From: Perna viridis
Lineage: Eukaryota
Reading direction: 5' to 3'
Length of the DNA: 64,000 nt
NCBI GenBank assembly: GCA_037379345.1
Contig: CM074521.1
Span: 26,002,704-26,066,703, forward strand
Position 1 is the stretch's first letter. Every line of letters begins with the position of its first letter. Shown here piece by piece: positions 1 through 64,000 of the stretch. Under the pieces are notes generated by a model. It saw nothing but the letters and a program-made list of their open reading frames with translations. It did no database searches and was not told where the DNA came from. A program made the translations under genes and the position numbers.

Positions 1-337
1 CTAGAATGTTAGATTAGCAACAATTTCAACTGCTTTTAAATGGATATGTAGATTTTATGTTAATTGAAAAAAAAAACTACAAATAAACAACAAAAACACA
101 TACAACATGAGAAAGAATTGGTGAGACGAGTAGCAGTAAGTTCAAAAAGACAACAATCACATAAACAACAAAACAAATTAAAAAGTTTCAAATCTCCATA
201 AAAATGACAAAAAAACTCATTGAGGAATAACATTTATGAGGAGCTGTACTTGGCTTCTCTTTGACATGTATGCCTGTTTAGTTTGGGCAAAATATTTTTG
301 AAATGTTCTCAATCTGCTGATGAAAAAAATCACTTAC

Positions 338-1501
338 CCGTTGATTGTGTTATTAAAGATGTTGTTCCTGTAGGTGTTTGACCAGTTGGTGGGGTAGTAG
401 CTGATGTTGTAGCAGAAACAGTAGCAGTTGTGGTCAGACTAACAGTTGTTGTAGGTGGAGCAGTAGTACCTGATGTAGTCTGGCTGGCTGTTGAACCAGT
501 TGTAGTACCTTGTGTGGTTGGTGGTGCAGTGGTACCTGATGTAGTCTGACTAACTGTTGTACCAGATGTAGTACCTTGTGTGGTTGGTGATGCAGGAGTT
601 CCTGATGTGGTCTGACTAGCTGTTGTTCCAGAAGTAGTTCCTTGTGTAGTTGGTGAAGCAGTGGTACCCGATGTGGTCTGACTAGCTGTTGTTCCAGATG
701 TAGAACTTTGTGTGGTAGTAGGAGGAGGTGTGGTTGGTGGAGCAGTGGTACCTGATGTAGTCTGACTAGCTGTTGTGCCAGATGTAGAACTTTGTGTGGT
801 AGTAGGAGGAGTGGTTCGTGGAGCAGTGGTACCTGATGTGGTTTGACTAGCTGTTGTGCCAGAAGTAGTTCCTTGTGTAGTTAGTGAAGCAGTGGTACCC
901 GATGTGGTCTGACTAGCTGTTGTGCCAGATGTAGAACTTTGTGTGGTAGTAGGAGGAGGAGTGGTTGGTGGAGCAGTGGTACCTGATGTGGTTTGACTAG
1001 CTGTTGTGCCAGAAGTAGTTCCTTGTGTAGTTGGTGAAGCAGTGGTACCCGATGTGGTCTGACTAGCTGTTGTGCCAGATGTAGAACTTTGTGTGGTAGT
1101 AGGAGGAGGAGTGGTTCGTGGAGCAGTGGTACCTGATGTGGTTTGACTAGCTGTTGTGCCAGAAGTAGTTCCTTGTGTAGTTGGTGAAGCAGTGGTACCC
1201 GATGTGGTCTGACTGGCTGTTGTGCCAGTTGTAGAACTTTGTGTGGTAGAACTTGGAGGAGTGGTTGGTGGAGCAGTGGTACCTGATGTAGTCAGACTAG
1301 CTGTTGTTCCAGAAGTAGTTCCTTGTGTAGTTTGTGGAGCAGTAGTTCCTGATGTGGTCTGACTAGCTGTTGTACCTGATGTAGAACCTGTAGTTGTTGT
1401 AACAGAGGTTGTACCTTGTGTGGTCGGAGGAGCAGTGGTACCAGATGTTGTCTCGCTAACTGTTGCAGTTGTGGTTCCTACAGTTGTTGTTGAAGGTGTA
1501 C
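338..1501 (-). CDS. PTS mucin exon (1164 nt, phase 1-1)
   Basis: TTTTAAG|GTACACCT acceptor and ACGG|GTAAGT donor; TTQGTTSGTTASQ/TTPPPPTTTQSST repeats; length divisible by 3. Confidence 0.85.
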
Positions 1502-4500
1502 CTTAAAAATGATGGTAAATTAAAGTAACTGACTTGGAGAGTAAAAAGAATAAATAAACTATTGTCATTTATAACAATAATTTCATCAGGTGAATTTGAA
1601 AAGAAAAAAATACATAGTTCAACACCAATATTTATAATTAATACGACAGTAGAACTGCCAAATTGTCAAAAAATTAAAAATGGGCTTCTTTCTTTTTTAA
1701 CTACAAGGTTGTATTAACAATCCTTATGTTTGGTTAATACTATGAACTACTTGACCTAATAACCAACAAGAAAATTGGTATTTAACCAGTAGTAAATACA
1801 GTAATGTCTTTGTTTCTTCATAAAGCCAAACAATCAAGCAAGGTTTCAACAAAATCCCATTTAGGGAGGATAATGATTTTTGATGTGCCAAATTATGAAA
1901 AAAAATATCTACTTTTTTTAAACATTGAACAATTGCAAAAGAACCTATACTGATTTTATCAAATAATGCTTTTACTGCAAGAAATAAAGTAAAAACATTT
2001 AAACAAATTATCCTCAATGCAGTCTCAGTTTTTCTTAATGCAACTTACTGAAATGGATTTGTGCATCTTACATTAAACCTTAATAAAATTTGTACAAATG
2101 ACAAATAAAAAAAAAACGTAAGCTGTATTTTCAGCTGTTACAACATTTACAAATCAATACTACATTATACTGTATCGCTTCTATTCACTTTCCATTAATT
2201 TCATCACGAAATTAAAAACTTTGCAGCTGTTTATTTTTATTTTGACATATGGGCCACGTGCTAAAAAAAAAAAAAAAATTTGTCAAAAAACGTCTTGATA
2301 TAATAGGCTTTTATGATTGGAATATTCGGATAGAATCTCCTGCTAAAAGAAATGCAATAAAATCAAGTGTGTTTGTCTAATTTGGCAGACTTTACACACT
2401 TTGCTCCATTTTGCATCCATGTTTCCATGTTATGCGTTGATGTTCTGCCAAAAACGTTTAGTTGGCAAATCAACATACATTTTAAAACAAAAAATATTAG
2501 AGACTATACATACTGATTCGAATAGTTTATTTGAAGGGTCGAATTTGATATAACAGCAGATACCCATTTGTATTTGCATTAAAAAGGAGTTATTACCTGT
2601 TGTAAAGCATGCTCTAACTTCAACATCTAATGAGTAATCCTTTGTTGCATCTTTCTTGCTCAGCACTTCAATAACTATTCCAACAGCACGTGTGTTAAAA
2701 TCAAATATGACTTCTTCATCCCCATTGAATACCTATTTATTAAGATGACATGTAAGTAAATATAAACGTAGACAACTTCCTTATAAATAATAATATACAC
2801 TTTAGTGTACAAAACACTATAATATACACTTTAGTGTACAAAACAATATAATATACACTTTAGTGTACAAAACACTATAATACACACTTTAGTGTACAAA
2901 ACACTACAATATTGCACATTTATTTAAATCTTTATCACAATGGAAAACTGTATTGGTCGAGCAGACATGCTGCAATTTTTTAATATGGGTACAATAAGGA
3001 TAAGTACATGTAATGTACACTATACTGTATTATAACCTATTTATTATACAGCTATCATTGAAAATATAAAGAGAGTAATTGCCTTGACATCTGTTTTAAA
3101 CAGTTATTAACGTCAACAAGCCAGTTTGTATGATCAATTTTGTTTGGACGGAAAAAACTCAAATCCAAAATGAAACTTCCAGCTATACCAAAACAGAAAG
3201 GTACAGAATGGTCATGTGACCTTAATAAAAGTTTTCCATAGTTTAAAGACATTTTTATTGACTTTGTAACAACTTACATTAAAATCATTACTGAAAAGTA
3301 TTATTTTCCGTTTATTCCACTACTAATTTATTGTGTAAGCTTTGAAAAATGTCATCACATTTCGTCAATGTGATAGACTTTGTAAGTATGACAACCCCAT
3401 ATATATTTGAAAAAAAATTGCTCTCTTCGTTCAAAATGTTTGAACAACAAAATGTTCATCACATTAACATGGACATTTGAGAGAGATGTCAGAATGATTA
3501 AGTGTTTTTTTTTTGGTTAACTTTTAATTTAAAACAGCACATTCTGTCTTAAGTTAATAAAATCGTTCATTTTAATACTTGCCTGACCATTTTTGTATTC
3601 AACTGGAGGTTTGCCTTCTTCGATAACCAACGAAATTGTAAAAGTTCCAACATTATTATCTTCTGGGTGCAAAAATTTAGTAGAACCAAGTTCTGTTTCT
3701 GTTTCAAATCCTATTTCTATTTTGACAGTATTAGTTGTTACAATCAGAGGTTCAGATTCAATTCCTGAGTCTGGACGCAATGCTTCACTATTTTTATTTC
3801 CATTGACTATCACAACTGGTGTAAAAACTGGATTCTGCATACCCTCATCATTGGTACAAACATTGGACACAGGTGTGGTTGTTTGCACTTTAATGTAAAA
3901 GAAACAAAATAAGATTATCATACCGGTTAACCTAAGGAACGTGTTATATTGTGGGATATTGTCCAAAATTGACCCTGTCTTGTGTGAGATATTAATTTAC
4001 CAAATTTTGTATGTAAGATTTCAATTATTTAGAACATTTTTCACAGATAATATAGTAATTTTAAGAAAAAAATATTCTACAAATCTTATATTTATATGTA
4101 AAAGATTCTGAAGTTTTCATTGATTTTGTCCACCTAAAGATGGAGGGTTAACAGACAGGGAATAGGTTCGATAATTGGTTGTAGTAACATGACCATTATA
4201 GAGTCTATCAAACACGCATGCACACACAAGCACTAGATTTTTTTGCCATCATTTGCCAGCTCATGAAAAAAAAATAATCAGACAAAAAACAAACAAAAAT
4301 AACCAAAAAACAAAAAAACAAAACAAAACAAAAAAAAAAACCCAAACAATTTTCAATGCATTTTTTATTTTCCACGTAAGATTAAACATTTTAGAAAAAT
4401 AGTTCTCGTCTTTATTTCTGATGATAATTTATGCTCTTTGGGCAGTTCTGAATTTAAATTTTATTTCAACATAAAAATAATGCATTTCTTGAAAAAGAGT

Positions 4501-52500: not shown

Positions 52501-55500
52501 TGTGACAAAGATAAAAGATTATTGCACAACAAATGTTATGAAAACCAAAATCTTTAAAAGTATTAAAAGTATTGTCACATAACTACAATGCACAAACTGA
52601 TGTCTACCAAAAATGATGCTAAGGTATTGTTTTGTTGATTTCCACTGTTCTTAACAAATAAAATAATTAATATTCCATCATATAAAAGTCACATACTAAG
52701 TTCAAAGCAAGCATGGATCTGTACTTGGAGCTTGACTGGTTTGTAGGCATCAATCTTATCTTGAGGAGTTATGATGATTTCAACTTTCTTCACATCTGGT
52801 TCAGTTCCTACATTTGTTGCTACTTCATTCACAGGAACCTGAAATAAGGCAATATGATTTTAATCAACTACCAAATGGCAAATCATGCTCACTACCACCA
52901 CATTCAATTGCACAAAAATACACAGACAAACATTTTTCAATTTATTTGGTATGAACACTCATGAAAAAATACAGATACAAACACGACAAAAGTTCAATAT
53001 CCTACCTGTTTTGTTGTCACAGTGCCATCAGGAGCAGTGAATTTCACAGTGAATGATTTAATGTTATCAGTTGAAACCAATTTCACTTCTTTTATAGGTC
53101 TCTCCTCTGAAGGTGTGTATTCCACAGAAAGTGTTGGTTGGGAACTTTCAAATGGGGTCTTAGATGTTGGTCTCAAGTCTTCAACATTTCCTGTACTATC
53201 ACTAACAGACAATTCACTACTTGGAATATATGTTGGTGACTCCATACCATCTGTTATTTCGCAAACAGGAGTTGTACTGGCAGTTCCTGTAAAGCAACAA
53301 AAACTCCAATCAATATCAGCTGCTGTAAGTTCTGTTTGCCAGAAATATTTCTCAACAAAACATGTTCTGTTGACTCAAAAAGTGATGGTTCACATTTTTA
53401 TACAGATGTAAGGGATATAACAAAACGTACCTGTAGTAGTAATGCCTGGTGGTGTGGCTGTACTTGAAACTTTCTCTGAGGTTGAACTTACAGCAGTGGT
53501 TACTGTAGTTGTTGATTCTATGAAAGAAAACCAATAGACACTGTAACTACATAGATCAAATTAATAGACTGATACCTACATTACAAATCAGATTTATAAA
53601 AGAATTTAACACTGACTGCATGTTCAGGAAAAGATTGTGTATTCAAAACAAAGCAAAAAAAGAACAGATGACTGGAAAATAATCAAATGACTTATTATCT
53701 AATCTCGGCAATTAGTATTCTTCAAGAAAACAATTTTAAACAACTGATTTGATACTGCCAACATTATTCACTGAAACACCAATCAAACTGATCACTGATG
53801 TTTTGGTATATTCATTCAACCACAATAAGGCATTCACATACGTACCAACTTCAAAGCAAGCATGTATCTGTATTTGGAGTTTGACTGGTTTGTAAGCGTC
53901 AATTTTGTCCTCAGGTGTTACAATAATTTCAACTTTCTTTACAAATGGTCTTGTTCCAACACTTGTTGCAACCTCATCCACAGGTACCTGTACAAAAATC
54001 AAAACCATGTATATACAACCTTTCTACATGTAGCAATCAAAGCATAACCATAATCACAATATTAGTTATGCAAAATGTCTAGGATTTACGAGTCATCCAC
54101 TGTACGGTTTATTTGAATTGCAAAGAAAAAATCTAATATGATAACTGCGAAGAAAGCATACCTGTTTTGTTGTCACTGAACCATCGGGATTAGTGAATTT
54201 CACTGTAAATGATTTAATGTTGTCCGTTGACACCAGCTTAACTTCTTTTACAGGTCTTTCTTCTGACGGTGTGTATACTATGGAAAGTGTTGGTTCAGAA
54301 CTTTCAAATGGAGTATCAGAGGTTGGTCTCAGGTTCTCAATATTTCCTGTTTTGTCACTCACAGATAATTCACTACTTGGAATAAATGTAGGTGACTCCA
54401 TACCATCTGTTATTTCACAAAGAGGAGTTGTACTGGCTGTTCCTGTAAAACAATCAGGTCACTCTCGTCATTACATGCAAAGAAAACATAATTTGTTATT
54501 TCTCGAACCATTTTAAGTTGACAAAATCAATTGAATTTTTAGACAAGTGTATCATCTCTTCCAACAGAACTTTTGTACTTGACAGTTGCATAAACAGTAT
54601 CAAATATTTCTGAACTAACCTGTACTTGATGTACTTGGTGGTGCAGTTGTACTGGTTACTTTCTTTGAGACAGAAGAAACAGGTGTGGTAGCAGTTGTTG
54701 TTGATTCTGCAAAATAATTAAGAATATCAATTGTTTGTGACAAAGATAAAAGATTATTGCACAACAAATGTTATGAAAACCAAAATCTTTAAAAGTATTA
54801 AAAGTATTGTCACATAACTACAATGCACAAACTGATGTCTACCAAAAATGATGCTAAGGTATTGTTTTGTTGATTTCCACTGTTCTTAACAAATAAAATA
54901 ATTAATATTCCATCATATAAAAGTCACATACCAAGTTCAAAGCAAGCATGGATCTGTACTTGGAGCTTGACTGGTTTGTAGGCATCAATCTTATCTTGAG
55001 GAGTTATGATGATTTCAACTTTCTTCACATCTGGTTCAGTTCCTACATTTGTTGCTACTTCATTCACAGGAACCTGAAATAAGGCAATATGATTTTAATC
55101 AACTACCAAATGGCAAATCATGCTCACTACCACCACATTCAATTGCACAAAAATACACAGACAAACATTTTTCAATTTATTTGGTATGAACACTCATGAA
55201 AAAATACAGATACAAACACGACAAAAGTTCAATATCCTACCTGTTTTGTTGTCACAGTGCCATCAGGAGCAGTGAATTTCACAGTGAATGATTTAATGTT
55301 ATCAGTTGAAACCAATTTCACTTCTTTTATAGGTCTCTCCTCTGAAGGTGTGTATTCCACAGAAAGTGTTGGTTGGGAACTTTCAAATGGGGTCTTAGAT
55401 GTTGGTCTCAAGTCTTCAACATTTCCTGTACTATCACTAACAGACAATTCACTACTTGGAATATATGTTGGTGACTCCATACCATCTGTTATTTCGCAAA

Positions 55501-58500
55501 CAGGAGTTGTACTGGCAGTTCCTGTAAAGCAACAAAAACTCCAATCAATATCAGCTGCTGTAAGTTCTGTTTGCCAGAAATATTTCTCAACAAAACATGT
55601 TCTGTTGACTCAAAAAGTGATGGTTCACATTTTTATACAGATGTAAGGGATATAACAAAACGTACCTGTAGTAGTAATGCCTGGTGGTGTGGCTGTACTT
55701 GAAACTTTCTCTGAGGTTGAACTTACAGCAGTGGTTACTGTAGTTGTTGATTCTATGAAAGAAAACCAATAGACACTGTAACTACATAGATCAAATTAAT
55801 AGACTGATACCTACATTACAAATCAGATTTATAACAGAATTTAACACTGACTGCATGTTCAGGAAAAGATTGTGTATTAAAAACAAAGCAAAAAAAGAAC
55901 AGATGACTGGAAAATAATCAAATGACTTATTATCTAATCTCGGCAATTAGTATTCTTCAAGAAAACAATTTTAAACAACTGATTTGATACTGCCAACATT
56001 ATTCACTGAAACACCAATCAAACTGATCACTGATGTTTTGGTATATTCATTCAACCACAATAAGGCATTCACATACGTACCAACTTCAAAGCAAGCATGT
56101 ATCTGTATTTGGAGTTTGACTGGTTTGTAAGCGTCAATTTTGTCCTCAGGTGTTACAATAATTTCAACTTTCTTTACAAATGGTCTTGTTCCAACACTTG
56201 TTGCAACCTCATCCACAGGTACCTGTACAAAAATCAAAACCATGTATATACAACCTTTCTACATGTAGCAATCAAAGCATAACCATAATCACAATATTAG
56301 TTATGCAAAATGTCTAGGATTTACGAGTCATTCACTGTACGGTTTATTTGAATTGCAAAGAAAAAATCTAATATGATAACTGCGAAGAAAGCATACCTGT
56401 TTTGTTGTCACTGAACCATCGGGATTAGTGAATTTCACTGTAAATGATTTAATGTTGTCCGTTGACACCAGCTTAACTTCTTTTACAGGTCTTTCTTCTG
56501 ACGGTGTGTATACTATGGAAAGTGTTGGTTCAGAACTTTCAAATGGAGTATCAGAGGTTGGTCTCAGGTTCTCAATATTTCCTGTTTTGTCACTCACAGA
56601 TAATTCACTACTTGGAATAAATGTAGGTGACTCCATACCATCTGTTATTTCACAAAGAGGAGTTGTACTGGCTGTTCCTGTAAAACAATCAGGTCACTCT
56701 CGTCATTACATGCAAAGAAAACATAATTTGTTATTTCTCGAACCATTTTAAGTTGACAAAATCAATTGAATTTTTAGACAAGTGTATCATCTCTTCCAAC
56801 AGAACTTTTGTACTTGACAGTTGCATAAACAGTATCAAATATTTCTGAACTAACCTGTACTTGATGTACTTGGTGGTGCAGTTGTACTGGTTACTTTCTT
56901 TGAGACAGAAGAAACAGGTGTGGTAGCAGTTGTTGTTGATTCTGCAAAATAATTAAGAATATCAATTGTTTGTGACAAAGATAAAAGATTATTGCACAAC
57001 AAATGTTATGAAAACCAAAATCTTTAAAAGTATTAAAAGTATTGTCACATAACTACAATGCACAAACTGATGTCTACCAAAAATGATGCTAAGGTATTGT
57101 TTTGTTGATTTCCACTGTTCTTAACAAATAAAATAATTAATATTCCATCATATAAAAGTCACATACCAAGTTCAAAGCAAGCATGGATCTGTACTTGGAG
57201 CTTGACTGGTTTGTAGGCATCAATCTTATCTTGAGGAGTTATGATGATTTCAACTTTCTTCACATCTGGTTCAGTTCCTACATTTGTTGCTACTTCATTC
57301 ACAGGAACCTGAAATAAGGCAATATGATTTTAATCAACTACCAAATGGCAAATCATGCTCACTACCACCACATTCAATTGCACAAAAATACACAGACAAA
57401 CATCTTTCAATTTATTTGGTATGAACACTCATGAAAAAATACAGATACAAACACGACAAAAGTTCAATATCCTACCTGTTTTGTTGTCACAGTGCCATCA
57501 GGAGCAGTGAATTTCACAGTGAATGATTTAATGTTATCAGTTGAAACCAATTTCACTTCTTTTATAGGTCTCTCCTCTGAAGGTGTGTATTCCACAGAAA
57601 GTGTTGGTTGGGAACTTTCAAATGGGGTCTTAGATGTTGGTCTCAAGTCTTCAACATTTCCTGTACTATCACTAACAGACAATTCACTACTTGGAATAAA
57701 TGTTGGTGACTCCATACCATCTGTTATTTCGCAAACAGGAGTTGTACTGGCAGTTCCTGTAAAGCAACAAAAACTCCAATCAATATCAGCTGCTGTAAGT
57801 TCTGTTTGCCAGAAATATTTCTCAACAAAACATGTTCTGTTGACTCAAAAAGTGATGGTCCACATTTTTATACAGATGTAAGGGATATAACAAAACGTAC
57901 CTGTAGTAGTAATGCCTGGTGGTGTGGCTGTACTTGAAACTTTCTCTGAGGTTGAACTTACAGCAGTGGTTACTGTAGTTGTTGATTCTATGAAAGAAAA
58001 CCAATAGACACTGTAACTACATAGATCAAATTAATAGACTGATACCTACATTACAAATCAGATTTATAACAGAATTTAACACTGACTGCATGTTCAGGAA
58101 AAGATTGTGTATTCAAAACAAAGCAAAAAAAAGGACAGATGACTGGAAAATAATCAAATGACTTATTATCTAATCTCGGCAATTAGTATTCTTCAAGAAA
58201 ACAATTTTTAACAACTGATTTGATACTGCCAACATTATTCACTGAAACACCAATCAAACTGATCACTGATGTTTTGGTATATTCATTCAACCACAATAAG
58301 GCATTCACATACGTACCAACTTCAAAGCAAGCATGTATCTGTATTTGGAGTTTGACTGGTTTGTAAGCGTCAATTTTGTCCTCAGGTGTTACAATAATTT
58401 CAACTTTCTTTACAAATGGTCTTGTTCCAACACTTGTTGCAACCTCATCCACAGGTACCTGTACAAAAATCAAAACCATGTATATACAACCTTTCTACAT

Positions 58501-61500
58501 GTAGCAATCAAAGCATAACCATAATCACAATATTAGTTATGCAAAATGTCTAGGATTTACGAGTCATTCACTGTACGGTTTATTTGAATTGCAAAGAAAA
58601 ACTCTAATATGATAACTGCGAAGAAAGCATACCTGTTTTGTTGTCACTGAACCATCGGGATTAGTGAATTTCACTGTAAATGATTTAATGTTGTCCGTTG
58701 ACACCAGCTTAACTTCTTTTACAGGTCTTTCTTCTGACGGTGTGTATACTATGGAAAGTGTTGGTTCAGAACTTTCAAATGGAGTATCAGAGGTTGGTCT
58801 CAGGTTCTCAATATTTCCTGTTTTGTCACTCACAGATAATTCACTACTTGGAATAAATGTAGGTGACTCCATACCATCTGTTATTTCACAAAGAGGAGTT
58901 GTACTGGCTGTTCCTGTAAAACAATCAGGTCACTCTCGTCATTACATGCAAAGAAAACATAATTTGTTATTTCTCGAACCATTTTAAGTTGACAAAATCA
59001 ATTGAATTTTTAGACAAGTGTATCATCTCTTCCAACAGAACTTTTGTACTTGACAGTTGCATAAACAGTATCAAATATTTCTGAACTAACCTGTACTTGA
59101 TGTACTTGGTGGTGCAGTTGTACTGGTTACTTTCTTTGAGACAGAAGAAACAGGTGTGGTAGCAGTTGTTGTTGATTCTGCAAAATAATTAAGAATATCA
59201 ATTGTTTGTGACAAAGATAAAAGATTATTGCACAACAAATGTTATGAAAACCAAAATCTTTAAAAGTATTAAAAGTATTGTCACATAACTACAATGCACA
59301 AACTGATGTCTACCAAAAATGATGCTAAGGTATTGTTTTGTTGATTTCCACTGTTCTTAACAAATAAAATAATTAATATTCCATCATATAAAAGTCACAT
59401 ACCAAGTTCAAAGCAAGCATGGATCTGTACTTGGAGCTTGACTGGTTTGTAGGCATCAATCTTATCTTGAGGAGTTATGATGATTTCAACTTTCTTCACA
59501 TCTGGTTCAGTTCCTACATTTGTTGCTACTTCATTCACAGGAACCTGAAATAAGGCAATATGATTTTAATCAACTACCAAATGGCAAATCATGCTCACTA
59601 CCACCACATTCAATTGCACAAAAATACACAGACAAACATCTTTCAATTTATTTGGTATGAACACTCATGAAAAAATACAGATACAAACACGACAAAAGTT
59701 CAATATCCTACCTGTTTTGTTGTCACAGTGCCATCAGGAGCAGTGAATTTCACAGTGAATGATTTAATGTTATCAGTTGAAACCAATTTCACTTCTTTTA
59801 TAGGTCTCTCCTCTGAAGGTGTGTATTCCACAGAAAGTGTTGGTTGGGAACTTTCAAATGGGGTCTTAGATGTTGGTCTCAAGTCTTCAACATTTCCTGT
59901 ACTATCACTAACAGACAATTCACTACTTGGAATAAATGTTGGTGACTCCATACCATCTGTTATTTCGCAAACAGGAGTTGTACTGGCAGTTCCTGTAAAG
60001 CAACAAAAACTCCAATCAATATCAGCTGCTGTAAGTTCTGTTTGCCAGAAATATTTCTCAACAAAACATGTTCTGTTGACTCAAAAAGTGATGGTCCACA
60101 TTTTTATACAGATGTAAGGGATATAACAAAACGTACCTGTAGTAGTAATGCCTGGTGGTGTGGCTGTACTTGAAACTTTCTCTGAGGTTGAACTTACAGC
60201 AGTGGTTACTGTAGTTGTTGATTCTATGAAAGAAAACCAATAGACACTGTAACTACATAGATCAAATTAATAGACTGATACCTACATTACAAATCAGATT
60301 TATAACAGAATTTAACACTGACTGCATGTTCAGGAAAAGATTGTGTATTCAAAACAAAGCAAAAAAAAGAACAGATGACTGGAAAATAATCAAATGACTT
60401 ATTATCTAATTTCGGCAATTAGTATTCTTCAAGAAAACAATTTTAAACAACTGATTTGATACTGCCAACATTATTCACTGAAACACCAATCAAACTGATC
60501 ACTGATGTTTTGGTATATTCATTCAACCACAATAAGGCATTCACATACGTACCAACTTCAAAGCAAGCATGTATCTGTATTTGGAGTTTGACTGGTTTGT
60601 AAGCGTCAATTTTGTCCTCAGGTGTTACAATAATTTCAACTTTCTTTACAAATGGTCTTGTTCCAACACTTGTTGCAACCTCATCCACAGGTACCTGTAC
60701 AAAAATCAAAACCATGTATATACAACCTTTCTACATGTAGCAATCAAAGCATAACCATAATCACAATATTAGTTATGCAAAATGTCTAGGATTTACGAGT
60801 CATCCACTGTACGGTTTATTTGAATTGCAAAGAAAAAATCTAATATGATAACTGCGAAGAAAGCATACCTGTTTTGTTGTCACTGAACCATCGGGATTAG
60901 TGAATTTCACTGTAAATGATTTAATGTTGTCCGTTGACACCAGCTTAACTTCTTTTACAGGTCTTTCTTCTGACGGTGTGTATACTATGGAAAGTGTTGG
61001 TTCAGAACTTTCAAATGGAGTATCAGAGGTTGGTCTCAGGTTCTCAATATTTCCTGTTTTGTCACTCACAGATAATTCACTACTTGGAATAAATGTAGGT
61101 GACTCCATACCATCTGTTATTTCACAAAGAGGAGTTGTACTGGCTGTTCCTGTAAAACAATCAGGTCACTCTCGTCATTACATGCAAAGAAAACATAATT
61201 TGTTATTTCTCGAACCATTTTAAGTTGACAAAATCAATTGAATTTTTAGACAAGTGTATCATCTCTTCCAACAGAACTTTTGTACTTGACAGTTGCATAA
61301 ACAGTATCAAATATTTCTGAACTAACCTGTACTTGATGTACTTGGTGGTGCAGTTGTACTGGTTACTTTCTTTGAGACAGAAGAAACAGGTGTGGTAGCA
61401 GTTGTTGTTGATTCTGCAAAATAATTAAGAATATCAATTGTTTGTGACAAAGATAAAAGATTATTGCACAACAAATGTTATGAAAACCAAAATCTTTAAA

Positions 61501-64000
61501 AGTATTAAAAGTATTGTCACATAACTACAATGCACAAACTGATGTCTACCAAAAATGATGCTAAGGTATTGTTTTGTTGATTTCCACTGTTCTTAACAAA
61601 TAAAATAATTAATATTCCATCATATAAAAGTCACATACCAAGTTCAAAGCAAGCATGGATCTGTACTTGGAGCTTGACTGGTTTGTAGGCATCAATCTTA
61701 TCTTGAGGAGTTATGATGATTTCAACTTTCTTCACATCTGGTTCAGTTCCTACATTTGTTGCTACTTCATTCACAGGAACCTGAAATAAGGCAATATGAT
61801 TTTAATCAACTACCAAATGGCAAATCATGCTCACTACCACCACATTCAATTGCACAAAAATACACAGACAAACATTTTTCAATTTATTTGGTATGAACAC
61901 TCATGAAAAAATACAGATACAAACACGACAAAAGTTCAATATCCTACCTGTTTTGTTGTCACAGTGCCATCAGGAGCAGTGAATTTCACAGTGAATGATT
62001 TAATGTTATCAGTTGAAACCAATTTCACTTCTTTTATAGGTCTCTCCTCTGAAGGTGTGTATTCCACAGAAAGTGTTGGTTGGGAACTTTCAAATGGGGT
62101 CTTAGATGTTGGTCTCAAGTCTTCAACATTTCCTGTACTATCACTAACAGACAATTCACTACTTGGAATATATGTTGGTGACTCCATACCATCTGTTATT
62201 TCGCAAACAGGAGTTGTACTGGCAGTTCCTGTAAAGCAACAAAAACTCCAATCAATATCAGCTGCTGTAAGTTCTGTTTGCCAGAAATATTTCTCAACAA
62301 AACATGTTCTGTTGACTCAAAAAGTGATGGTTCACATTTTTATACAGATGTAAGGGATATAACAAAACGTACCTGTAGTAGTAATGCCTGGTGGTGTGGC
62401 TGTACTTGAAACTTTCTCTGAGGTTGAACTTACAGCAGTGGTTACTGTAGTTGTTGATTCTATGAAAGAAAACCAATAGACACTGTAACTACATAGATCA
62501 AATTAATAGACTGATACCTACATTACAAATCAGATTTATAACAGAATTTAACACTGACTGCATGTTCAGGAAAAGATTGTGTATTCAAAACAAAGCAAAA
62601 AAAAGAACAGATGACTGGAAAATAATCAAATGACTTATTATCTAATTTCGGCAATTAGTATTCTTCAAGAAAACAATTTTAAACAACTGATTTGATACTG
62701 CCAACATTATTCACTGAAACACCAATCAAACTGATCACTGATGTTTTGGTATATTCATTCAACCACAATAAGGCATTCACATACGTACCAACTTCAAAGC
62801 AAGCATGTATCTGTATTTGGAGTTTGACTGGTTTGTAAGCGTCAATTTTGTCCTCAGGTGTTACAATAATTTCAACTTTCTTTACAAATGGTCTTGTTCC
62901 AACACTTGTTGCAACCTCATCCACAGGTACCTGTACAAAAATCAAAACCATGTATATACAACCTTTCTACATGTAGCAATCAAAGCATAACCATAATCAC
63001 AATATTAGTTATGCAAAATGTCTAGGATTTACGAGTCATCCACTGTACGGTTTATTTGAATTGCAAAGAAAAAATCTAATATGATAACTGCGAAGAAAGC
63101 ATACCTGTTTTGTTGTCACTGAACCATCGGGATTAGTGAATTTCACTGTAAATGATTTAATGTTGTCCGTTGACACCAGCTTAACTTCTTTTACAGGTCT
63201 TTCTTCTGACGGTGTGTATACTATGGAAAGTGTTGGTTCAGAACTTTCAAATGGAGTATCAGAGGTTGGTCTCAGGTTCTCAATATTTCCTGTTTTGTCA
63301 CTCACAGATAATTCACTACTTGGAATAAATGTAGGTGACTCCATACCATCTGTTATTTCACAAAGAGGAGTTGTACTGGCTGTTCCTGTAAAACAATCAG
63401 GTCACTCTCGTCATTACATGCAAAGAAAACATAATTTGTTATTTCTCGAACCATTTTAAGTTGACAAAATCAATTGAATTTTTAGACAAGTGTATCATCT
63501 CTTCCAACAGAACTTTTGTACTTGACAGTTGCATAAACAGTATCAAATATTTCTGAACTAACCTGTACTTGATGTACTTGGTGGTGCAGTTGTACTGGTT
63601 ACTTTCTTTGAGACAGAAGAAACAGGTGTGGTAGCAGTTGTTGTTGATTCTGCAAAATAATTAAGAATATCAATTGTTTGTGACAAAGATAAAAGATTAT
63701 TGCACAACAAATGTTATGAAAACCAAAATCTTTAAAAGTATTAAAAGTATTGTCACATAACTACAATGCACAAACTGATGTCTACCAAAAATGATGCTAA
63801 GGTATTGTTTTGTTGATTTCCACTGTTCTTAACAAATAAAATAATTAATATTCCATCATATAAAAGTCACATACCAAGTTCAAAGCAAGCATGGATCTGT
63901 ACTTGGAGCTTGACTGGTTTGTAGGCATCAATCTTATCTTGAGGAGTTATGATGATTTCAACTTTCTTCACATCTGGTTCAGTTCCTACATTTGTTGCTA
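338..64000 (-). CDS. Giant multi-exon mucin-like protein with PTS repeats and >=20 discoidin/FA58C-like domains (partial; extends beyond both window ends)
   Basis: About 82 exons bounded by AG and GT (one GC) with mutually compatible phases; summed length ~24.3 kb; Thr/Ser-rich repeats; FA58C motifs in the 42.8-47.6 kb exons. Confidence 0.85.
2597..2732 (-). CDS. Domain A copy 2, C-terminal exon (VFNGDEEVIF...LDVEVRACFTTG)
   Basis: 136 nt, phase 0-1, AG/GT; paralogue of 16986-17121. Confidence 0.85.
2792..2910. repeat. 29-bp intronic minisatellite, 4 copies
   Basis: aatatacactttagtgtacaaaacactat repeated four times with single changes. Confidence 0.9.
3583..3887 (-). CDS. Domain A copy 2, N-terminal exon (CTNDEGMQNP...EYKNGQ), GC donor
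   Basis: 305 nt, phase 1-0; ends CAG|GCAAGT; paralogue of 18859-19172. Confidence 0.8.
5443..6039 (-). CDS. PTS mucin exon (597 nt)
   Basis: Acceptor TTCTTTAG is clear; donor CAAG|GTACGA is the best phase-1 candidate. Confidence 0.7.
6190..7005 (-). CDS. PTS mucin exon (816 nt)
   Basis: AG / GTAAAT boundaries, phase 1-1. Confidence 0.85.
7756..8283 (-). CDS. PTS mucin exon (528 nt)
   Basis: AG / GTAAGT boundaries, phase 1-1; overlaps ORF 7742..8170. Confidence 0.85.
8887..10017 (-). CDS. PTS mucin exon (1131 nt)
   Basis: AG / GTACTT boundaries, phase 1-1; overlaps ORF 8849..9904. Confidence 0.85.
10635..11255 (-). CDS. PTS mucin exon (621 nt)
   Basis: Same boundaries as its neighbour; phase 1-1. 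Confidence 0.85.
11873..12670 (-). CDS. PTS mucin exon (798 nt; begins GTTLSTTPPPPAPPSS)
   Basis: TTCAAG|GA acceptor; 5' part nearly identical to exon 39619-39951. Confidence 0.85.
13618..13668 (-). CDS. Thr-rich linker micro-exon (51 nt)
   Basis: CAAG acceptor, GTAAGA donor; PTPVSTASTTAGTTTL. Confidence 0.75.
   Translation of the reverse strand, partial: HLPQYQQLQLLLEQPH
13884..14043 (-). CDS. Domain B copy 2, C-terminal exon (KTFEGK...FFRVCYTPGTG)
   Basis: 160 nt, phase 0-1; paralogue of 40530-40683. Confidence 0.85.
14658..14938 (-). CDS. Domain B copy 2, N-terminal exon (VCENPVTFDF...VSENT)
   Basis: 281 nt, phase 1-0; paralogue of 41153-41436. Confidence 0.85.
15648..15728 (-). CDS. 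Thr-rich linker exon (81 nt)
   Basis: TTTTCTAG acceptor, GTAGTG donor, phase 1-1. Confidence 0.8.
16986..17121 (-). CDS. Domain A copy 1, C-terminal exon (IFSGDEQVIF...LDLEVRACFTTG)
   Basis: 136 nt, phase 0-1. Confidence 0.85.
18859..19172 (-). CDS. Domain A copy 1, N-terminal exon (CTSEEGMQNP...EYKNGE)
   Basis: 314 nt, phase 1-0, donor GAG|GTATGT. Confidence 0.85.
19589..19912 (-). CDS. PTS mucin exon, last of array 2 (donor uncertain)
   Basis: Acceptor TTCTGTAG is clear; the frame meets TAA near 19563, so a G|GTAC donor inside the repeat must be used or the exon is skipped. Confidence 0.55.
20866..22101 (-). CDS. PTS mucin exon (1236 nt)
   Basis: Array-2 acceptor and donor; phase 1-1. 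Confidence 0.85.
23062..23904 (-). CDS. PTS mucin exon (843 nt)
   Basis: Array-2 acceptor and donor; phase 1-1. Confidence 0.85.
24830..25468 (-). CDS. PTS mucin exon (639 nt)
   Basis: Inside ORF 24744..25514; AG / GTACTT boundaries. Confidence 0.85.
26395..27033 (-). CDS. PTS mucin exon (639 nt)
   Basis: Tandem copy. Confidence 0.85.
27959..28597 (-). CDS. PTS mucin exon (639 nt)
   Basis: Tandem copy. Confidence 0.85.
29524..30162 (-). CDS. PTS mucin exon (639 nt)
   Basis: Tandem copy. Confidence 0.85.
31088..31726 (-). CDS. PTS mucin exon (639 nt)
   Basis: Tandem copy. Confidence 0.85.
32653..33291 (-). CDS. PTS mucin exon (639 nt)
   Basis: Tandem copy. Confidence 0.85.
34217..35035 (-). 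CDS. PTS mucin exon (819 nt)
   Basis: Inside ORF 34158..35081; same splice sites. Confidence 0.85.
35937..36914 (-). CDS. PTS mucin exon (978 nt), first of array 2
   Basis: TATGTAG|GT acceptor and array-2 donor. Confidence 0.85.
38194..39452 (-). pseudogene. Decayed PTS pseudo-exon
   Basis: Acceptor CTAG|GT ACT AAA ACA GGA TAA gives an immediate stop; frameshifts; 8-nt deletion near 38277; eroded donor context. Confidence 0.8.
39619..39951 (-). CDS. PTS exon (333 nt; begins GTTLSTTPPPPAPPSS)
   Basis: Phase 1-1, donor GTAAGC. Confidence 0.8.
40173..40211 (-). CDS. Linker micro-exon (39 nt)
   Basis: TTTTCAG acceptor, GTAGGT donor; STVSSTTYSSST. Confidence 0.75.
40530..40683 (-). CDS. Domain B copy 1, C-terminal exon (KTFTGK...QFRVCYAPG)
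   Basis: 154 nt, phase 0-1. Confidence 0.85.
41153..41436 (-). CDS. Domain B copy 1, N-terminal exon (KICENPVTFDY...TEEI)
   Basis: 284 nt, phase 1-0. Confidence 0.85.
42073..42126 (-). CDS. Thr-rich linker micro-exon (54 nt)
   Basis: AG/GT, phase 1-1. Confidence 0.75.
42326..42379 (-). CDS. Thr-rich linker micro-exon (54 nt)
   Basis: AG/GT, phase 1-1. Confidence 0.75.
42802..42952 (-). CDS. FA58C/discoidin domain 2, C-terminal exon (VFEGNTD...ELRFEIVGCAE)
   Basis: F-x-GN-x-D and LRFE-x-x-GC motifs; 151 nt, phase 0-1. Confidence 0.85.
43396..44765 (-). mobile_element. 5'-truncated, disabled Penelope-like retroelement (RT core + 3' UTR) in an intron
   Basis: NPYKQRFIAGS, IKTYDFSTLYT, MGTNCA-x-x-LADLFL, FRYIDD, YLDL and YDKRDDF motifs; frameshifts and an in-frame TGA; frame ends near 43677. 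Confidence 0.9.
45015..45298 (-). CDS. FA58C/discoidin domain 2, N-terminal exon (ECADEM...AWSP...VTAIILQGG...FVQKFQVGY)
   Basis: AW, VTAI-x-x-QG and FV-x-x-F-x-V-x-Y discoidin motifs; 284 nt, phase 1-0. Confidence 0.85.
45545..45619 (-). CDS. Thr-rich linker exon (75 nt)
   Basis: TTTTAG acceptor, GTGAGT donor, phase 1-1. Confidence 0.8.
46436..46456 (-). CDS. 21-nt micro-exon (ITSTGT)
   Basis: TCTTTTCAG|CT ATA ACA TCA ACA GGG ACA G|GTAGGT; phase 1-1. Confidence 0.6.
46768..46909 (-). CDS. FA58C/discoidin domain 1, C-terminal exon (IFKGNNG...VRIFPLSW...FELFGCMF)
   Basis: VRI-x-P-x-x-W and FELFGC motifs; 142 nt, phase 0-1; different frame from the ORF-track call. Confidence 0.88.
47328..47608 (-). 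CDS. FA58C/discoidin domain 1, N-terminal exon (SCDYVL...PWVP...FVKSFRIEV)
   Basis: 281 nt, phase 1-0, donor GGT|GTAAGT. Confidence 0.85.
48015..48065 (-). CDS. Linker micro-exon (51 nt)
   Basis: AG / GTATGT, phase 1-1. Confidence 0.75.
48227..50235 (-). CDS. Macro-repeat unit: two discoidin-like domains + two linkers (340 aa)
   Basis: Exons 50149-50235, 49691-49971, 49375-49516, 48960-49046, 48535-48815, 48227-48368 (87/281/142 nt, twice). Confidence 0.85.
50461..52471 (-). CDS. Macro-repeat unit (6 exons, 340 aa)
   Basis: Exons 52385-52471, 51927-52207, 51611-51752, 51195-51281, 50770-51050, 50461-50602. Confidence 0.85.
52697..54706 (-). CDS. Macro-repeat unit (6 exons, 340 aa)
   Basis: Exons 54620-54706, 54162-54442, 53846-53987, 53431-53517, 53006-53286, 52697-52838. 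Confidence 0.85.
54932..56941 (-). CDS. Macro-repeat unit (6 exons, 340 aa)
   Basis: Exons 56855-56941, 56397-56677, 56081-56222, 55666-55752, 55241-55521, 54932-55073. Confidence 0.85.
57167..59177 (-). CDS. Macro-repeat unit (6 exons, 340 aa)
   Basis: Exons 59091-59177, 58633-58913, 58317-58458, 57901-57987, 57476-57756, 57167-57308. Confidence 0.85.
59403..61413 (-). CDS. Macro-repeat unit (6 exons, 340 aa)
   Basis: Exons 61327-61413, 60869-61149, 60553-60694, 60137-60223, 59712-59992, 59403-59544. Confidence 0.85.
61639..63649 (-). CDS. Macro-repeat unit (6 exons, 340 aa)
   Basis: Exons 63563-63649, 63105-63385, 62789-62930, 62373-62459, 61948-62228, 61639-61780. Confidence 0.85.
63875..64000 (-). 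CDS. Partial C-terminal domain exon of the next upstream unit
   Basis: ...KLQVQIHACFEL G|GTATGT; cut by the window edge. Confidence 0.85.

What the first reader, a model, noticed from the sequence alone, without database searches (positions are those of the whole stretch)
2597..64000. A cryptic domain family: all ~140-aa modules share the discoidin exon blueprint across a gradient of divergence
Seen: every domain is a phase-1 / 281-314-nt exon / phase-0 intron / 136-160-nt exon / phase-1 pair with one Cys near each end (C-x4-GM...HACF, RACF, RVCY, FGC, VGC). The two at 42.8-47.6 kb keep clear FA58C motifs; types A, B and the macro-repeat type have lost most of them (types A and macro-repeat have no Trp) yet keep exon sizes, even exactly 281+142 nt. 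Inference: they are remote discoidin-fold derivatives closed by an N-to-C disulfide, probably missed by profile searches and possibly with new ligands or a purely structural role.
Basis: partly seen in the sequence, partly recalled or inferred. Interest (0 to 1): 0.75.

Follow-up and report, generated by a model that had tools for sequence, protein, structure and literature searches.

The report
Hidden discoidin-like domains in mollusc mucin
A giant bivalve mucus-protein gene is built largely from a roughly 140-residue domain that standard family searches do not recognise but that folds like the sugar- and lipid-binding discoidin domain, so the unannotated cores of mollusc mucins can now be read.

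Summary
All 20 modules in the window (14 macro-repeat "M", 2 A, 2 B, 2 Pfam-recognisable F) are minus-strand exon pairs: phase 1, then 281-314 nt, a phase-0 intron, 136-160 nt, phase 1. Each exon carries one Cys. Spliced contigs from four runs confirm the junctions of A1 and B2.

Pfam sees F5_F8_type_C only in the two F modules. A and M belong to one family: 79 hits among 1.84 billion representatives, with named members in Mytilus, Patella and a chiton, all labelled "mucin-like".

I folded spliced database relatives instead. The better AlphaFold2 model (pLDDT 87) matches CBM32, factor V/VIII C, neuropilin b1 and DDR discoidin domains (Z 12-13.5). The model's aligned ends fall near its two terminal Cys.

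Canonical FA58C genes of the same genome have the same phase-0 intron, directly before the (I/V/L)FxG motif. Profile comparisons link A/M to FA58C and B to A/M. B shows no direct signal to FA58C, and its fold is untested.

Verdict: a divergent, undescribed discoidin subfamily amplified in a mollusc mucin. First readers had already noted the same idea in overlapping and adjacent windows of this gene.

The parts
2597..2732 (-). Type A2 exon 2 (136 nt, phase 0 in, phase 1 out; VFNGDEE...VRACFTT)
   Evidence: Splice sites read; no Pfam hit.
3583..3887 (-). Type A2 exon 1 (305 nt, phase 1 in, phase 0 out; needs a GC donor, CAG|GCAAGT)
   Evidence: Its open frame is in the protein library as P0001.
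13884..14043 (-). Type B2 exon 2 (160 nt)
   Evidence: Junction 14043|14658 seen in contigs of 4 of 4 runs.
14658..14938 (-). Type B2 exon 1 (281 nt)
15648..15728 (-). 81-nt phase-1/phase-1 linker exon between A1 and B2
   Evidence: Seen only in the spliced contigs (joints 14938|15648 and 15727(+1)|16985(+1)).
16986..17121 (-). Type A1 exon 2 (136 nt)
18859..19172 (-). Type A1 exon 1 (314 nt)
   Evidence: BLASTP against M1 exon 1 gives E = 4e-9.
40530..40683 (-). Type B1 exon 2 (154 nt)
41153..41436 (-). Type B1 exon 1 (284 nt)
   Evidence: The A/M exon-1 HMM scores it 11.2 bits.
42802..42952 (-). F2 (Pfam-recognisable discoidin) exon 2 (151 nt; VFEGNTDN...EIVGC)
45015..45298 (-). F2 exon 1 (284 nt)
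   Evidence: Pfam F5_F8_type_C, 30.7 bits, profile 15-82. The A/M exon-1 HMM scores it 14.4 bits.
46768..46909 (-). F1 exon 2 (142 nt; IFKGNNG...ELFGC)
47328..47608 (-). F1 exon 1 (281 nt)
   Evidence: Pfam F5_F8_type_C, 18.2 bits, under the cut-off, profile 23-82.
48227..48815 (-). M domain 14 (exon 1 48815..48535, exon 2 48368..48227)
49375..49971 (-). M domain 13 (exon 1 49971..49691, exon 2 49516..49375)
50461..51050 (-). M domain 12 (exon 1 51050..50770, exon 2 50602..50461)
51611..52207 (-). M domain 11 (exon 1 52207..51927, exon 2 51752..51611)
   Evidence: Exon 1 is 60% and exon 2 is 66% identical to abutting parts of Mytilus coruscus P0005.
52697..53286 (-). M domain 10 (exon 1 53286..53006, exon 2 52838..52697)
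53846..54442 (-). M domain 9 (exon 1 54442..54162, exon 2 53987..53846)
54932..55521 (-). M domain 8 (exon 1 55521..55241, exon 2 55073..54932)
56081..56677 (-). M domain 7 (exon 1 56677..56397, exon 2 56222..56081)
57167..57756 (-). M domain 6 (exon 1 57756..57476, exon 2 57308..57167)
58317..58913 (-). M domain 5 (exon 1 58913..58633, exon 2 58458..58317)
59403..59992 (-). M domain 4 (exon 1 59992..59712, exon 2 59544..59403)
60553..61149 (-). M domain 3 (exon 1 61149..60869, exon 2 60694..60553)
61639..62228 (-). M domain 2 (exon 1 62228..61948, exon 2 61780..61639)
62789..63385 (-). M domain 1 (exon 1 63385..63105, exon 2 62930..62789)
48960..63649 (-). Fourteen 87-nt phase-1/phase-1 Ser/Thr-rich linker exons, one before each M domain (first 63649..63563, last 49046..48960)

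Best explanation
The window is the middle of one very large minus-strand mucin gene of a bivalve. Between its Ser/Thr/Pro-rich exons lie about 140-residue globular modules. Each module is a frame-symmetric two-exon cassette (phase 1, phase 0, phase 1), so it can be duplicated without breaking the frame.

Types A and M belong to a domain family that Pfam does not recognise. Its named members come from bivalves, a gastropod and a chiton. The family descends from the F5/8 type C (discoidin, CBM32-like) domain.

What the family keeps: the eight-stranded jelly-roll fold, the Cys at each end (inferred to form the canonical clamp disulfide), the N-terminal C-x4-GM...IP motif, an LRP block at the place of the CBM32 'NLRDGN..W' block, and the ancestral phase-0 intron. 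What the copies in this window have lost: the Trp residues and most Pfam-scoring positions.

Type B is a further diverged relative of A/M; its fold is inferred, not shown.

Likely function (inferred): beads between short glycosylated linkers that give the mucin filament lectin-like or self-associating contact points. This is the role CysD domains play in vertebrate MUC2/MUC5.
For: Anatomy: 20 of 20 modules fit the cassette. The A1 and B2 junctions appear in spliced contigs of 4 of 4 runs.

A family of their own:
- The profile of A+M exon 1 found 79 proteins at E <= 1e-3 among 1.84 billion.
- Named members are Mytilus coruscus, M. californianus 'mucin-17-like', Patella vulgata 'mucin-2-like' and Liolophura sinensis 'mucin-2-like'.
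- M1 exon 1 against A1 exon 1 gives BLASTP E = 4e-9.
- The window's M exon 1 and exon 2 match abutting residues 1-90 and 91-137 of a Mytilus protein slice.

Invisible to Pfam.

Fold:
- The AlphaFold2 model of a Patella domain has pLDDT 87.3 and pTM 0.83.
- Foldseek gave 112 PDB matches at E <= 1e-3. The top ones are NanJ CBM32 (6e-6), CpGH89 CBM32-4 and -6, factor VIII and V C domains, neuropilin b1 and lactadherin C2.
- VIA-align gave 97 chains at Z >= 8: NRP2 13.5, CBM32-6 13.0 (rmsd 2.5 over 121 residues), NRP1 b1 12.9, DDR1 12.4, factor VIII 12.3, discoidin I 12.2.
- Aligned ranges 6..146 on NRP1 274..427, 5..145 on DDR2 29..188 and 5..146 on factor V C2 0..159 start and stop beside the model's Cys6 and Cys143.

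Sequence:
- The family profile's best PDB hit is CBM32 4a42_A, with E = 0.054 for 11 full domains and E = 0.0077 for 56 exon-1 sequences, in register.
- hhalign, family against FA58C exons of this genome: exon 1 scores 23.3 and exon 2 scores 19.7. None of 100 column shuffles reached either score; the shuffle maxima were 15.1 and 16.0.
- The family exon-1 HMM scores the Pfam-positive F2 at 14.4 bits (E = 4.7e-5 among 17 targets).

Intron:
- 17 of 53 PF00754 matches in this genome end at profile position 81-83, and 5 start at 84-86.
- 10 of 10 loci examined have a phase-0 donor candidate there.
- 5 of 5 second exons open in phase 0 directly before (I/V/L)FxG. 4 of 5 close in phase 1 after 139-157 nt, one after exactly 142 nt.

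Type B to A/M:
- hhalign scores 25.9 (exon 1) and 20.3 (exon 2); 0 of 100 shuffles reached either.
- The B HMM scores Mytilus M exon 1 at 18.4 bits.
- The family HMM scores B2 at 17.8 bits.

Mucin context:
- Patella P0091 has VWD x3, C8 x2, TIL x3 and LDLa x5 ahead of an array of these domains.
- There are VWD matches on the same strand 41 kb upstream of the last M-like copy.
Against: - No model was made of the window's own domains, because I left out the joined step. The folded proteins are relatives: 60-66% identical for M, about 30% for A.
Its best VIA matches were HERC2 DOC (Z 8.6) and IFT25 (8.1), ahead of CBM32 (7.0).
- In the better model, IFT25 (12.9) and DOC (12.4) tie with discoidin domains. 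Fold alone therefore shows the galactose-binding-like superfold, not FA58C descent.
- Sequence signals are weak. hhalign probabilities are 27-47%.
- Shallow window-only profiles gave nothing.
- Full domains against the C-terminal two-thirds of FA58C aligned only over the last 22 columns (P = 0.026).
- The family HMM does not score F1 (0.9 bits).
- B against FA58C shows no signal: 22 of 100 and 56 of 100 shuffles reached the observed scores. The B profile finds nothing relevant in PDB sequences.
- Most canonical FA58C genes here have an extra phase-1 intron near profile position 15-22, and other FA58C genes have different introns. The shared blueprint is the 82|83 intron plus the outer phases, not the whole exon pattern.
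- The function is not tested at all.
Confidence: 0.8

Rival explanations
1. A, B and M are members of the galactose-binding-like superfold, but they do not descend from FA58C. They would come from another branch, or be convergent, and merely sit beside true discoidin modules.
For: VIA-align ties IFT25 and the DOC domains of HERC2 and APC10 with discoidin domains in both models. Pfam F5_F8_type_C does not score them. The Trp block is missing in A and M.
Against: - The best PDB sequence hit is a CBM32 module, twice and in register.
- The family HMM hits the Pfam-positive F2 exon.
- hhalign to FA58C exons beats 100 of 100 shuffles for both exons.
- The intron has the same position and phase as in canonical FA58C of this genome.
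- The domains are secreted and carry a terminal Cys pair. From recall, not from a call, that pair is typical of animal discoidin domains and absent from the cytosolic DOC and IFT25 domains.
- Many family members elsewhere keep PW, DDW and FxG at the FA58C positions.
Confidence: 0.1
2. Type B is an unrelated domain with another fold. It shares only the cassette format because exon shuffling in this gene favours 1-1 cassettes.
For: - There is no direct signal between B and FA58C.
- The B profile finds nothing relevant in PDB sequences.
- No spliced B protein was found to fold.
- The look-alike domain in Patella P0091 is not significant (E = 0.71; 3.5 bits).
- ESM Atlas neighbours score only 0.84-0.85.
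Against: - B links to A/M in both exons, each above 100 of 100 shuffles.
- The HMMs hit in both directions: 18.4 bits for the B HMM on a Mytilus M sequence and 17.8 bits for the family HMM on B2.
- The internal phase-0 intron is the same, and B1 and B2 exon 2 open with TFxG.
- Trp sits at the FA58C 'W-x-P' place in the window alignment.
- The named ESM Atlas neighbours are all F5/8 type C clusters (weak).
Confidence: 0.2
3. The modules are decaying or non-coding repeat copies, not parts of a working protein.
For: Copies in the macro-repeat are 98-100% identical among copies of one kind, so recent amplification alone could keep the frames open. A2 needs a rare GC donor.
Against: - 20 of 20 modules have open frames and intact splice sites.
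- Spliced contigs at word depth 48-188 were found in four runs.
- Orthologous arrays exist in Mytilus, Patella and a chiton.
Confidence: 0.03

Closest known systems
F5/8 type C (discoidin, FA58C) domain, Pfam PF00754, including bacterial CBM32
   Same: - Predicted jelly-roll fold.
- About 140-150 residues, with a Cys at each end.
- N-terminal C-x4-GM...I motif. It is also present in a canonical exon of this genome, L020.
- The phase-0 intron before (I/V/L)FxG.
- It sits in the same gene as two Pfam-recognisable copies.
   Different: - It scores below every Pfam threshold.
- A and M in the window have no Trp.
- Exon 2 of M has lost FxG.
- It is amplified to about 71 near-identical copies plus about 20 diverged ones in one locus.
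- The ligand is unknown.
Hemolectin-type and lophotrochozoan VWD mucin-like proteins with F5_F8 domains (Lang et al. 2016, PMC4948705; passages read)
   Same: VWD-C8-TIL proteins of protostomes that carry discoidin domains. The paper states that the F5_F8 domain is characteristic of lophotrochozoan mucin-like proteins. This genome also has such a gene, with VWD followed by canonical FA58C, at C11:27.108-27.156 Mb.
   Different: That paper found domains with Pfam-type profiles, which miss this family. Here the domains form long arrays alternating with PTS linkers rather than a short central block. The paper's supplementary figure S4 was not available to me and might show such proteins.
CysD domain (Pfam Mucin2_WxxW) of vertebrate MUC2/MUC5
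   Same: A small disulfide-stabilised globular domain interspersed in the PTS region of a gel-forming mucin (described in PMC4948705). The position in the molecule is analogous.
   Different: The fold and sequence are unrelated. CysD has many cysteines and a WxxW motif. This is an analogy of position only, and the function is not tested.
DOC/APC10 and IFT25 domains (galactose-binding-like superfold)
   Same: The structural scores are as high as for discoidin domains.
   Different: From recall: these are cytosolic, lack the terminal Cys pair and are not found in mucins. No sequence signal to them appeared.

Membership tests
F5/8 type C (PF00754) | Scores over the Pfam gathering cut-off (28.2 bits) | tested here: not met
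   - A, B and M, exon by exon: no hit at E <= 10.
- Nine whole spliced relatives: no F5_F8_type_C hit at E <= 1.
- Patella P0091: none at E <= 0.01.
- F2 exon 1 meets the cut-off (30.7 bits). F1 exon 1 alone does not (18.2 bits).
F5/8 type C (PF00754) | Discoidin-type eight-stranded jelly-roll beta sandwich | tested here: met
   Met for spliced relatives of the A/M family only. The Patella domain model (pLDDT 87.3) matches CBM32, factor V/VIII C, NRP b1 and DDR domains at Z 11.9-13.5 and Foldseek E down to 6e-6. The Mytilus M-type model is weaker. The window's own joined domains and type B were not folded.
F5/8 type C (PF00754) | Cys near the N end and Cys near the C end joined by a disulfide | tested here: inconclusive
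   The Cys pair is present in 20 of 20 modules. The model's Cys6 and Cys143 lie at the ends of the ranges aligned to NRP1 b1, DDR2 and factor V C2. No coordinates were available to measure the distance. The residue numbers of the reference disulfides are recalled, not taken from a call.
F5/8 type C (PF00754) | Conserved Trp-containing core block (W...(I/V)xVDL) and FxGN motif | tested here: not met
   - A and M in the window have no Trp (alignments).
- A keeps (V/I)FxGD at the start of exon 2; M does not.
- B and F keep the Trp.
- Family members elsewhere keep PW, DDW and FxG.
F5/8 type C (PF00754) | Ligand binding by the loops at one end of the barrel (sugar, phospholipid, collagen) | not testable with these tools
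   No binding assay or reliable loop model is available.
Gel-forming (VWD-type) mucin | [quoted passage not shown] | tested here: inconclusive
   There are VWD matches on the same strand at C11:26257142-26257489 (E = 1.4e-21) and 26269364-26269612, 41 kb upstream of the last M-like copy. One continuous transcript was not shown. Patella P0091 has VWD x3, C8 x2 and TIL x3 ahead of these domains.
Gel-forming (VWD-type) mucin | Long Pro/Thr/Ser-rich repeat regions | tested here: met
   There are open PTS exons at 0.3-1.5, 5.3-12.7 and 19.5-40 kb on the minus strand, and a 1467-aa PTS exon upstream in L001.

The most novel reading that the evidence does not exclude
This family is the molluscan counterpart of the vertebrate CysD domain: a discoidin-derived lectin bead. 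Having lost the ancestral Trp-lined core positions, it would have gained a new ligand, either the mucin's own O-glycans or the surfaces of microbes and food particles. Its copy number (about 90 in this gene) would then set gel strength and particle capture in suspension-feeding molluscs. The family may extend to other Spiralia; an unnamed rotifer cluster was the second-nearest ESM Atlas neighbour.
Probability: 0.25. Interest if true: 0.7.

Novelty: new variant of a known kind. Interest (0 to 1): 0.5.

Why it matters
Current annotation labels the central thousands of residues of mollusc 'mucin-2-like' and 'mucin-17-like' proteins as nothing, or mislabels them. One Patella isoform is named after RNA polymerase II.

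Recognising a discoidin-derived domain there does three things:
- It gives these mucins a readable architecture: VWD head, then beads of a lectin-type fold on glycosylated string.
- It supplies a seed for a new family profile.
- It turns a vague question, how invertebrate mucus gels cross-link and bind particles, into testable experiments on one small, expressible domain.

It is also a clean example of intron position and phase outliving detectable sequence similarity.

It is not a new kind of thing, however. Discoidin domains in lophotrochozoan mucin-like proteins are already in print (PMC4948705).

Tried and rejected
What led nowhere:
- Window-only profile-profile comparisons (A+M against F, B against F, A+M against B) were too shallow to say anything: probabilities 0.3-2.7%.
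- The search for homologous proteins returned only exon-sized fragments or the query itself. This held for the full-domain alignment, for B1 and for the B alignment. No spliced B protein was found, so B could not be folded.
- Eleven full domains against the single-exon C-terminal two-thirds of canonical FA58C aligned only over the last 22 columns (P = 0.026).
- The B profile against PDB sequences gave only chance hits to designed helical repeats.
- A domain in Patella P0091 (about residues 1578-1720) looked B-like by eye. It is not significant: BLASTP E = 0.71 and 0.21, and 3.5 bits from the B HMM.
- The ESM Atlas gave only weak leads: scores 0.81-0.90, with the named neighbours being F5/8 type C or CBM32 clusters.
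- The RT-like open frames in the F2 intron have no Pfam hit.

What I considered and rejected:
- The long plus-strand frames (VPDVVWLAVV...) are the antisense of the PTS repeats, not genes.
- P0039 and P0063 are repetitive proteins with no Cys...GM...ACFE pattern. I took them for false positives and dropped them from all alignments.

Literature. Four searches found no description of this domain: (terms: mucin/discoidin/mollusc; gel-forming mucin/discoidin/invertebrate; mucin/Mytilus/mucus/discoidin; mucin/bivalve/tandem repeat/novel domain/mucus). I saw only the listings, apart from passages of PMC4948705. Its supplementary figure S4 was not available.

The Cys-Cys distance could not be measured, because model coordinates are not exposed.
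Full report
What is in the window. Six-frame reading shows one coding strand, the minus strand. Long Thr/Ser/Pro-rich open exons lie at 0.3-1.5, 5.3-12.7 and 19.5-40 kb. The long plus-strand frames (VPDVVWLAVV...) are the antisense of the PTS repeats.

Exon anatomy. I read every boundary and scanned the macro-repeat with splice-anchored patterns. All 20 of 20 modules enter in phase 1, have an internal phase-0 intron and leave in phase 1.
- Exon 1 sizes: 281 nt (14 M copies, F1, B2), 284 nt (F2, B1), 305 nt (A2), 314 nt (A1).
- Exon 2 sizes: 136 nt (A1, A2), 142 nt (14 M copies, F1), 151 nt (F2), 154 nt (B1), 160 nt (B2).
- Each exon has one Cys. A and M have no Trp.
- A2 closes its frame only through a GC donor.
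- The macro-repeat (period about 2236 nt, seven units in the window) is M1, an 87-nt linker exon, M2, an 87-nt linker exon.

Transcription and splicing. Fifteen runs that the tool guesses to be RNA held 15-24% of the sampled words of 13800-19300. The four module exons there make up 16% of that stretch. I laid four runs from four studies. Each has one contig (word depth 48-188) that joins 13884-14043, 14658-14938, 15648-15727/8, 16985/6-17121 and 18859-19174, and every skipped part ends CT..AC. This confirms my B2 and A1 boundaries to the base and adds an 81-nt linker exon. Contigs do not prove that the runs are RNA, but genomic DNA would not carry these joints.

Extent of the gene.
- M exon 1 has 92 matches in the genome. 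71 of them are 86-100% identical, at C11:26,051,238-26,129,630. 20 more diverged ones (45-64%) lie on the same strand up to 26,216,458. One lies on another contig.
- VWD matches lie on the same strand at 26,257,142 and 26,269,364.
- Type B exon 1 has only five copies.
- I infer, but did not show, one VWD-headed mucin gene of 270 kb or more.

What profile libraries see. Pfam, exon by exon at E <= 10, finds F5_F8_type_C only in F2 exon 1 (30.7 bits, profile 15-82) and F1 exon 1 (18.2 bits, under the cut-off, profile 23-82). It finds nothing in A, B, M or any exon 2.

The joined step. To study whole domains I used spliced proteins that the databases already hold.

The A/M family.
- A profile of four exon-1 sequences (M1, M2, A2, A1) found 79 proteins at E <= 1e-3 among 1.84 billion representatives. 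Most are exon-sized open frames. Two (P0039, P0063) I dropped as false positives.
- Eleven hold whole spliced domains.
- Named members: Mytilus coruscus CAC5411568.1; M. californianus XP_052090872.1, 'mucin-17-like', 4412 aa, made of repeated M-type domains and PTS linkers; Liolophura sinensis XP_064614628.1, 'mucin-2-like'; Patella vulgata XP_055959230.1, 'mucin-2-like', 4007 aa.
- The window's M1 exon 1 and exon 2 match residues 1-90 (60% identity) and 91-137 (66%) of the Mytilus slice, abutting with no gap. The annotated protein therefore has the same junction.
- M and A are clear homologues (BLASTP E = 4e-9).
- Many members elsewhere keep 'LRPxSxxPW', 'DDW' and 'FxG'.
- None of nine whole proteins scores F5_F8_type_C at E <= 1. 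In Patella P0091, Pfam sees VWD x3, C8 x2, TIL x3 and LDLa x5, and nothing in the roughly 2200-residue array of these domains.

Fold.
- Model 1 (Mytilus M type, 11-row alignment) was mediocre: pLDDT 71.8, pTM 0.68, with both termini under pLDDT 50. Foldseek put NRP2 b1, a pectin-binding CBM32, lactadherin C2 and factor VIII/V C2 on top, at E about 6e-4 and TM 0.43-0.50. VIA-align put HERC2 DOC (Z 8.6) and IFT25 (8.1) ahead of CBM32 (7.0) and discoidin I (6.4).
- Model 2 (a Patella domain with an A-like C-terminal half, 32-row alignment, 30% identical to the window's A1 exon 1) reached pLDDT 87.3 and pTM 0.83.
- For model 2, Foldseek gave 112 matches at E <= 1e-3. They are headed by NanJ CBM32 (6e-6, TM 0.57/0.60), CpGH89 CBM32-4 and -6, AlyQ CBM32, factor VIII, factor V C2 and NRP2 b1. 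Nearly all of the 50 listed rows are CBM32, coagulation-factor C, neuropilin b, lactadherin or related lectin modules.
- For model 2, VIA-align gave 97 chains at Z >= 8: NRP2 13.5, CBM32-6 13.0 (rmsd 2.5 over 121), IFT25 12.9, NRP1 12.9, DDR1 12.4, HERC2 DOC 12.4, factor VIII 12.3, discoidin I 12.2, factor V C2 11.9.
- The fold is therefore a galactose-binding-like jelly roll. Discoidin/CBM32 is the best-represented family, but structural score alone does not separate it from DOC and IFT25.
- The model's Cys6 and Cys143 sit at the ends of the aligned ranges on NRP1 b1 (6..146 on 274..427), DDR2 (5..145 on 29..188) and factor V C2 (5..146 on 0..159). From recall, that is where those domains carry their clamp disulfide. 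I could not measure the distance, because no coordinates are exposed.

Sequence links to FA58C.
- A profile of 11 full domains has CBM32 4a42_A as its best hit among 177,635 PDB sequences (E = 0.054).
- A profile of 56 exon-1 sequences hits the same chain at E = 0.0077. The family's LRP block falls on 'NLRDGN..W', and the following strands are in register.
- I built FA58C exon alignments from this genome's PF00754 matches plus F1 and F2, and ran hhalign. Family against FA58C scores 23.3 for exon 1 (75 columns, P = 6.9e-4) and 19.7 for exon 2 (33 columns, P = 4.3e-4). None of 100 column shuffles reached either score; the maxima were 15.1 and 16.0.
- The family exon-1 HMM scores the Pfam-positive F2 at 14.4 bits (E = 4.7e-5 among 17 targets). 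It scores F1 at only 0.9 bits.
- A canonical exon of another gene (L020) opens 'CMSRLGMSDSRIPDSALSVSS', which is the family's C-x4-GM...IP motif.

The intron.
- Of 53 PF00754 matches in this genome, 17 end at profile position 81-83 and 5 start at 84-86.
- 10 of 10 loci examined have a phase-0 donor candidate at that end.
- 5 of 5 second exons open with a phase-0 acceptor directly before (I/V/L)FxG. 4 of 5 have a phase-1 donor 139, 142, 145 or 157 nt later.
- The window's A exon 2 opens VFNGD/IFSGD, B1 and B2 open KTFxGK, and F opens VFEGN/IFKGN.
- So the 'blueprint' is real. Most canonical exon-1 regions here are split by one more phase-1 intron near profile position 15-22, and other FA58C genes use other positions (about 23-31 and about 60).
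- These canonical splice sites are consensus candidates. They are not verified by RNA.

Type B.
- B is tied to A/M. hhalign scores 25.9 (exon 1) and 20.3 (exon 2), and 0 of 100 shuffles reached either. The B exon-1 HMM scores Mytilus M sequences at up to 18.4 bits. The family HMM scores B2 at 17.8 and B1 at 11.2 bits.
- B shows no direct signal to FA58C: 22 of 100 and 56 of 100 shuffles reached the observed scores. Nothing relevant turned up in PDB sequences.
- ESM Atlas neighbours with a family name are all F5/8 type C clusters, but at scores of 0.84, which is only a lead.
- No spliced B protein was found, so B's fold stays inferred.

What is known. Lang et al. 2016 (PMC4948705, passages read) state that protostome mucin-like proteins of the hemolectin type carry F5_F8_type_C domains, and that this domain is characteristic of Lophotrochozoa. 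This genome has such a gene 1 Mb away: VWD at C11:27.108-27.118 Mb, followed by canonical FA58C at 27.125-27.156 Mb. What I did not find in Pfam or in four literature searches is this divergent family and its role as the main repeat of mollusc mucins.

Function. Nothing here tests it. From position I infer a cross-linking or lectin-like bead: globular beads between 27-29-residue glycosylated linkers, downstream of a VWD head in Patella. That is analogous to CysD in vertebrate MUC2/MUC5. The conserved residues (GM, LRP, N-V, ACFE) look like core positions, so they say nothing about a ligand.

Verdict. This is a new, Pfam-invisible variant of a known domain kind in a known protein class. It is useful for annotation and for a testable idea about mucus, but it is not a new category.

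Noticed in passing
window 3577-3590 (minus strand): Exon 1 of A2 keeps its frame only with a GC donor (CAG|GCAAGT after base 3583). The GT five bases upstream would shift the frame into a stop in exon 2. It is either a GC-AG intron or a first sign of decay in this copy.
   Followed up: partly
window 43262-44809 (minus strand), inside the F2 intron: Several open frames of 100-142 aa, one with a YIDDVL motif that recalls reverse transcriptases. This is probably a retroelement fragment inserted in the intron. Pfam finds nothing in two of the frames.
   Followed up: partly
L001 5483-9886 (G000:C11:26180482-26184885, minus strand): Upstream in the same locus, a single 1467-aa open exon runs from a long PTS repeat straight into an M-like exon 1 without the phase-1 intron. 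The internal phase-0 intron is kept.
   Followed up: partly
G000:C11:27108437-27155840 (plus strand): A second gene 1 Mb away has VWD exons followed by at least seven Pfam-positive FA58C exons with a different intron pattern: the last roughly 100 residues of each domain sit in one exon.
   Followed up: partly
window 16376-16927 and 18400-18590: Intron stretches are covered by many short contigs with loose ends and odd joints (16514 to 16805-16808) in the laid runs. These are probably transcribed dispersed repeats.
   Followed up: no
P0092 (cluster of P0072): A 145-aa protein with a whole domain of this family is filed in NCBI as a hypothetical protein of a 'Candidatus Omnitrophica' metagenome-assembled genome, on a 1.4-kb contig. 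More likely it is an animal contig binned by mistake than a bacterial member.
   Followed up: no
P0040: Three Patella vulgata isoforms made only of these domains and PT-rich linkers are named 'DNA-directed RNA polymerase II subunit rpb1-like'. This is presumably an automatic name triggered by the linker repeats.
   Followed up: no
P0005 residues 186-326: The second-nearest ESM Atlas cluster by features (0.86) is an unnamed eukaryotic cluster whose few recorded members are rotifers. This is a lead that the family may reach beyond molluscs.
   Followed up: no
window 20925-38670 (plus strand): Long plus-strand open frames (VPDVVWLAVV...) mirror the PTS exons. They are the antisense reading of the Thr/Ser/Pro repeats, not genes.
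   Followed up: yes
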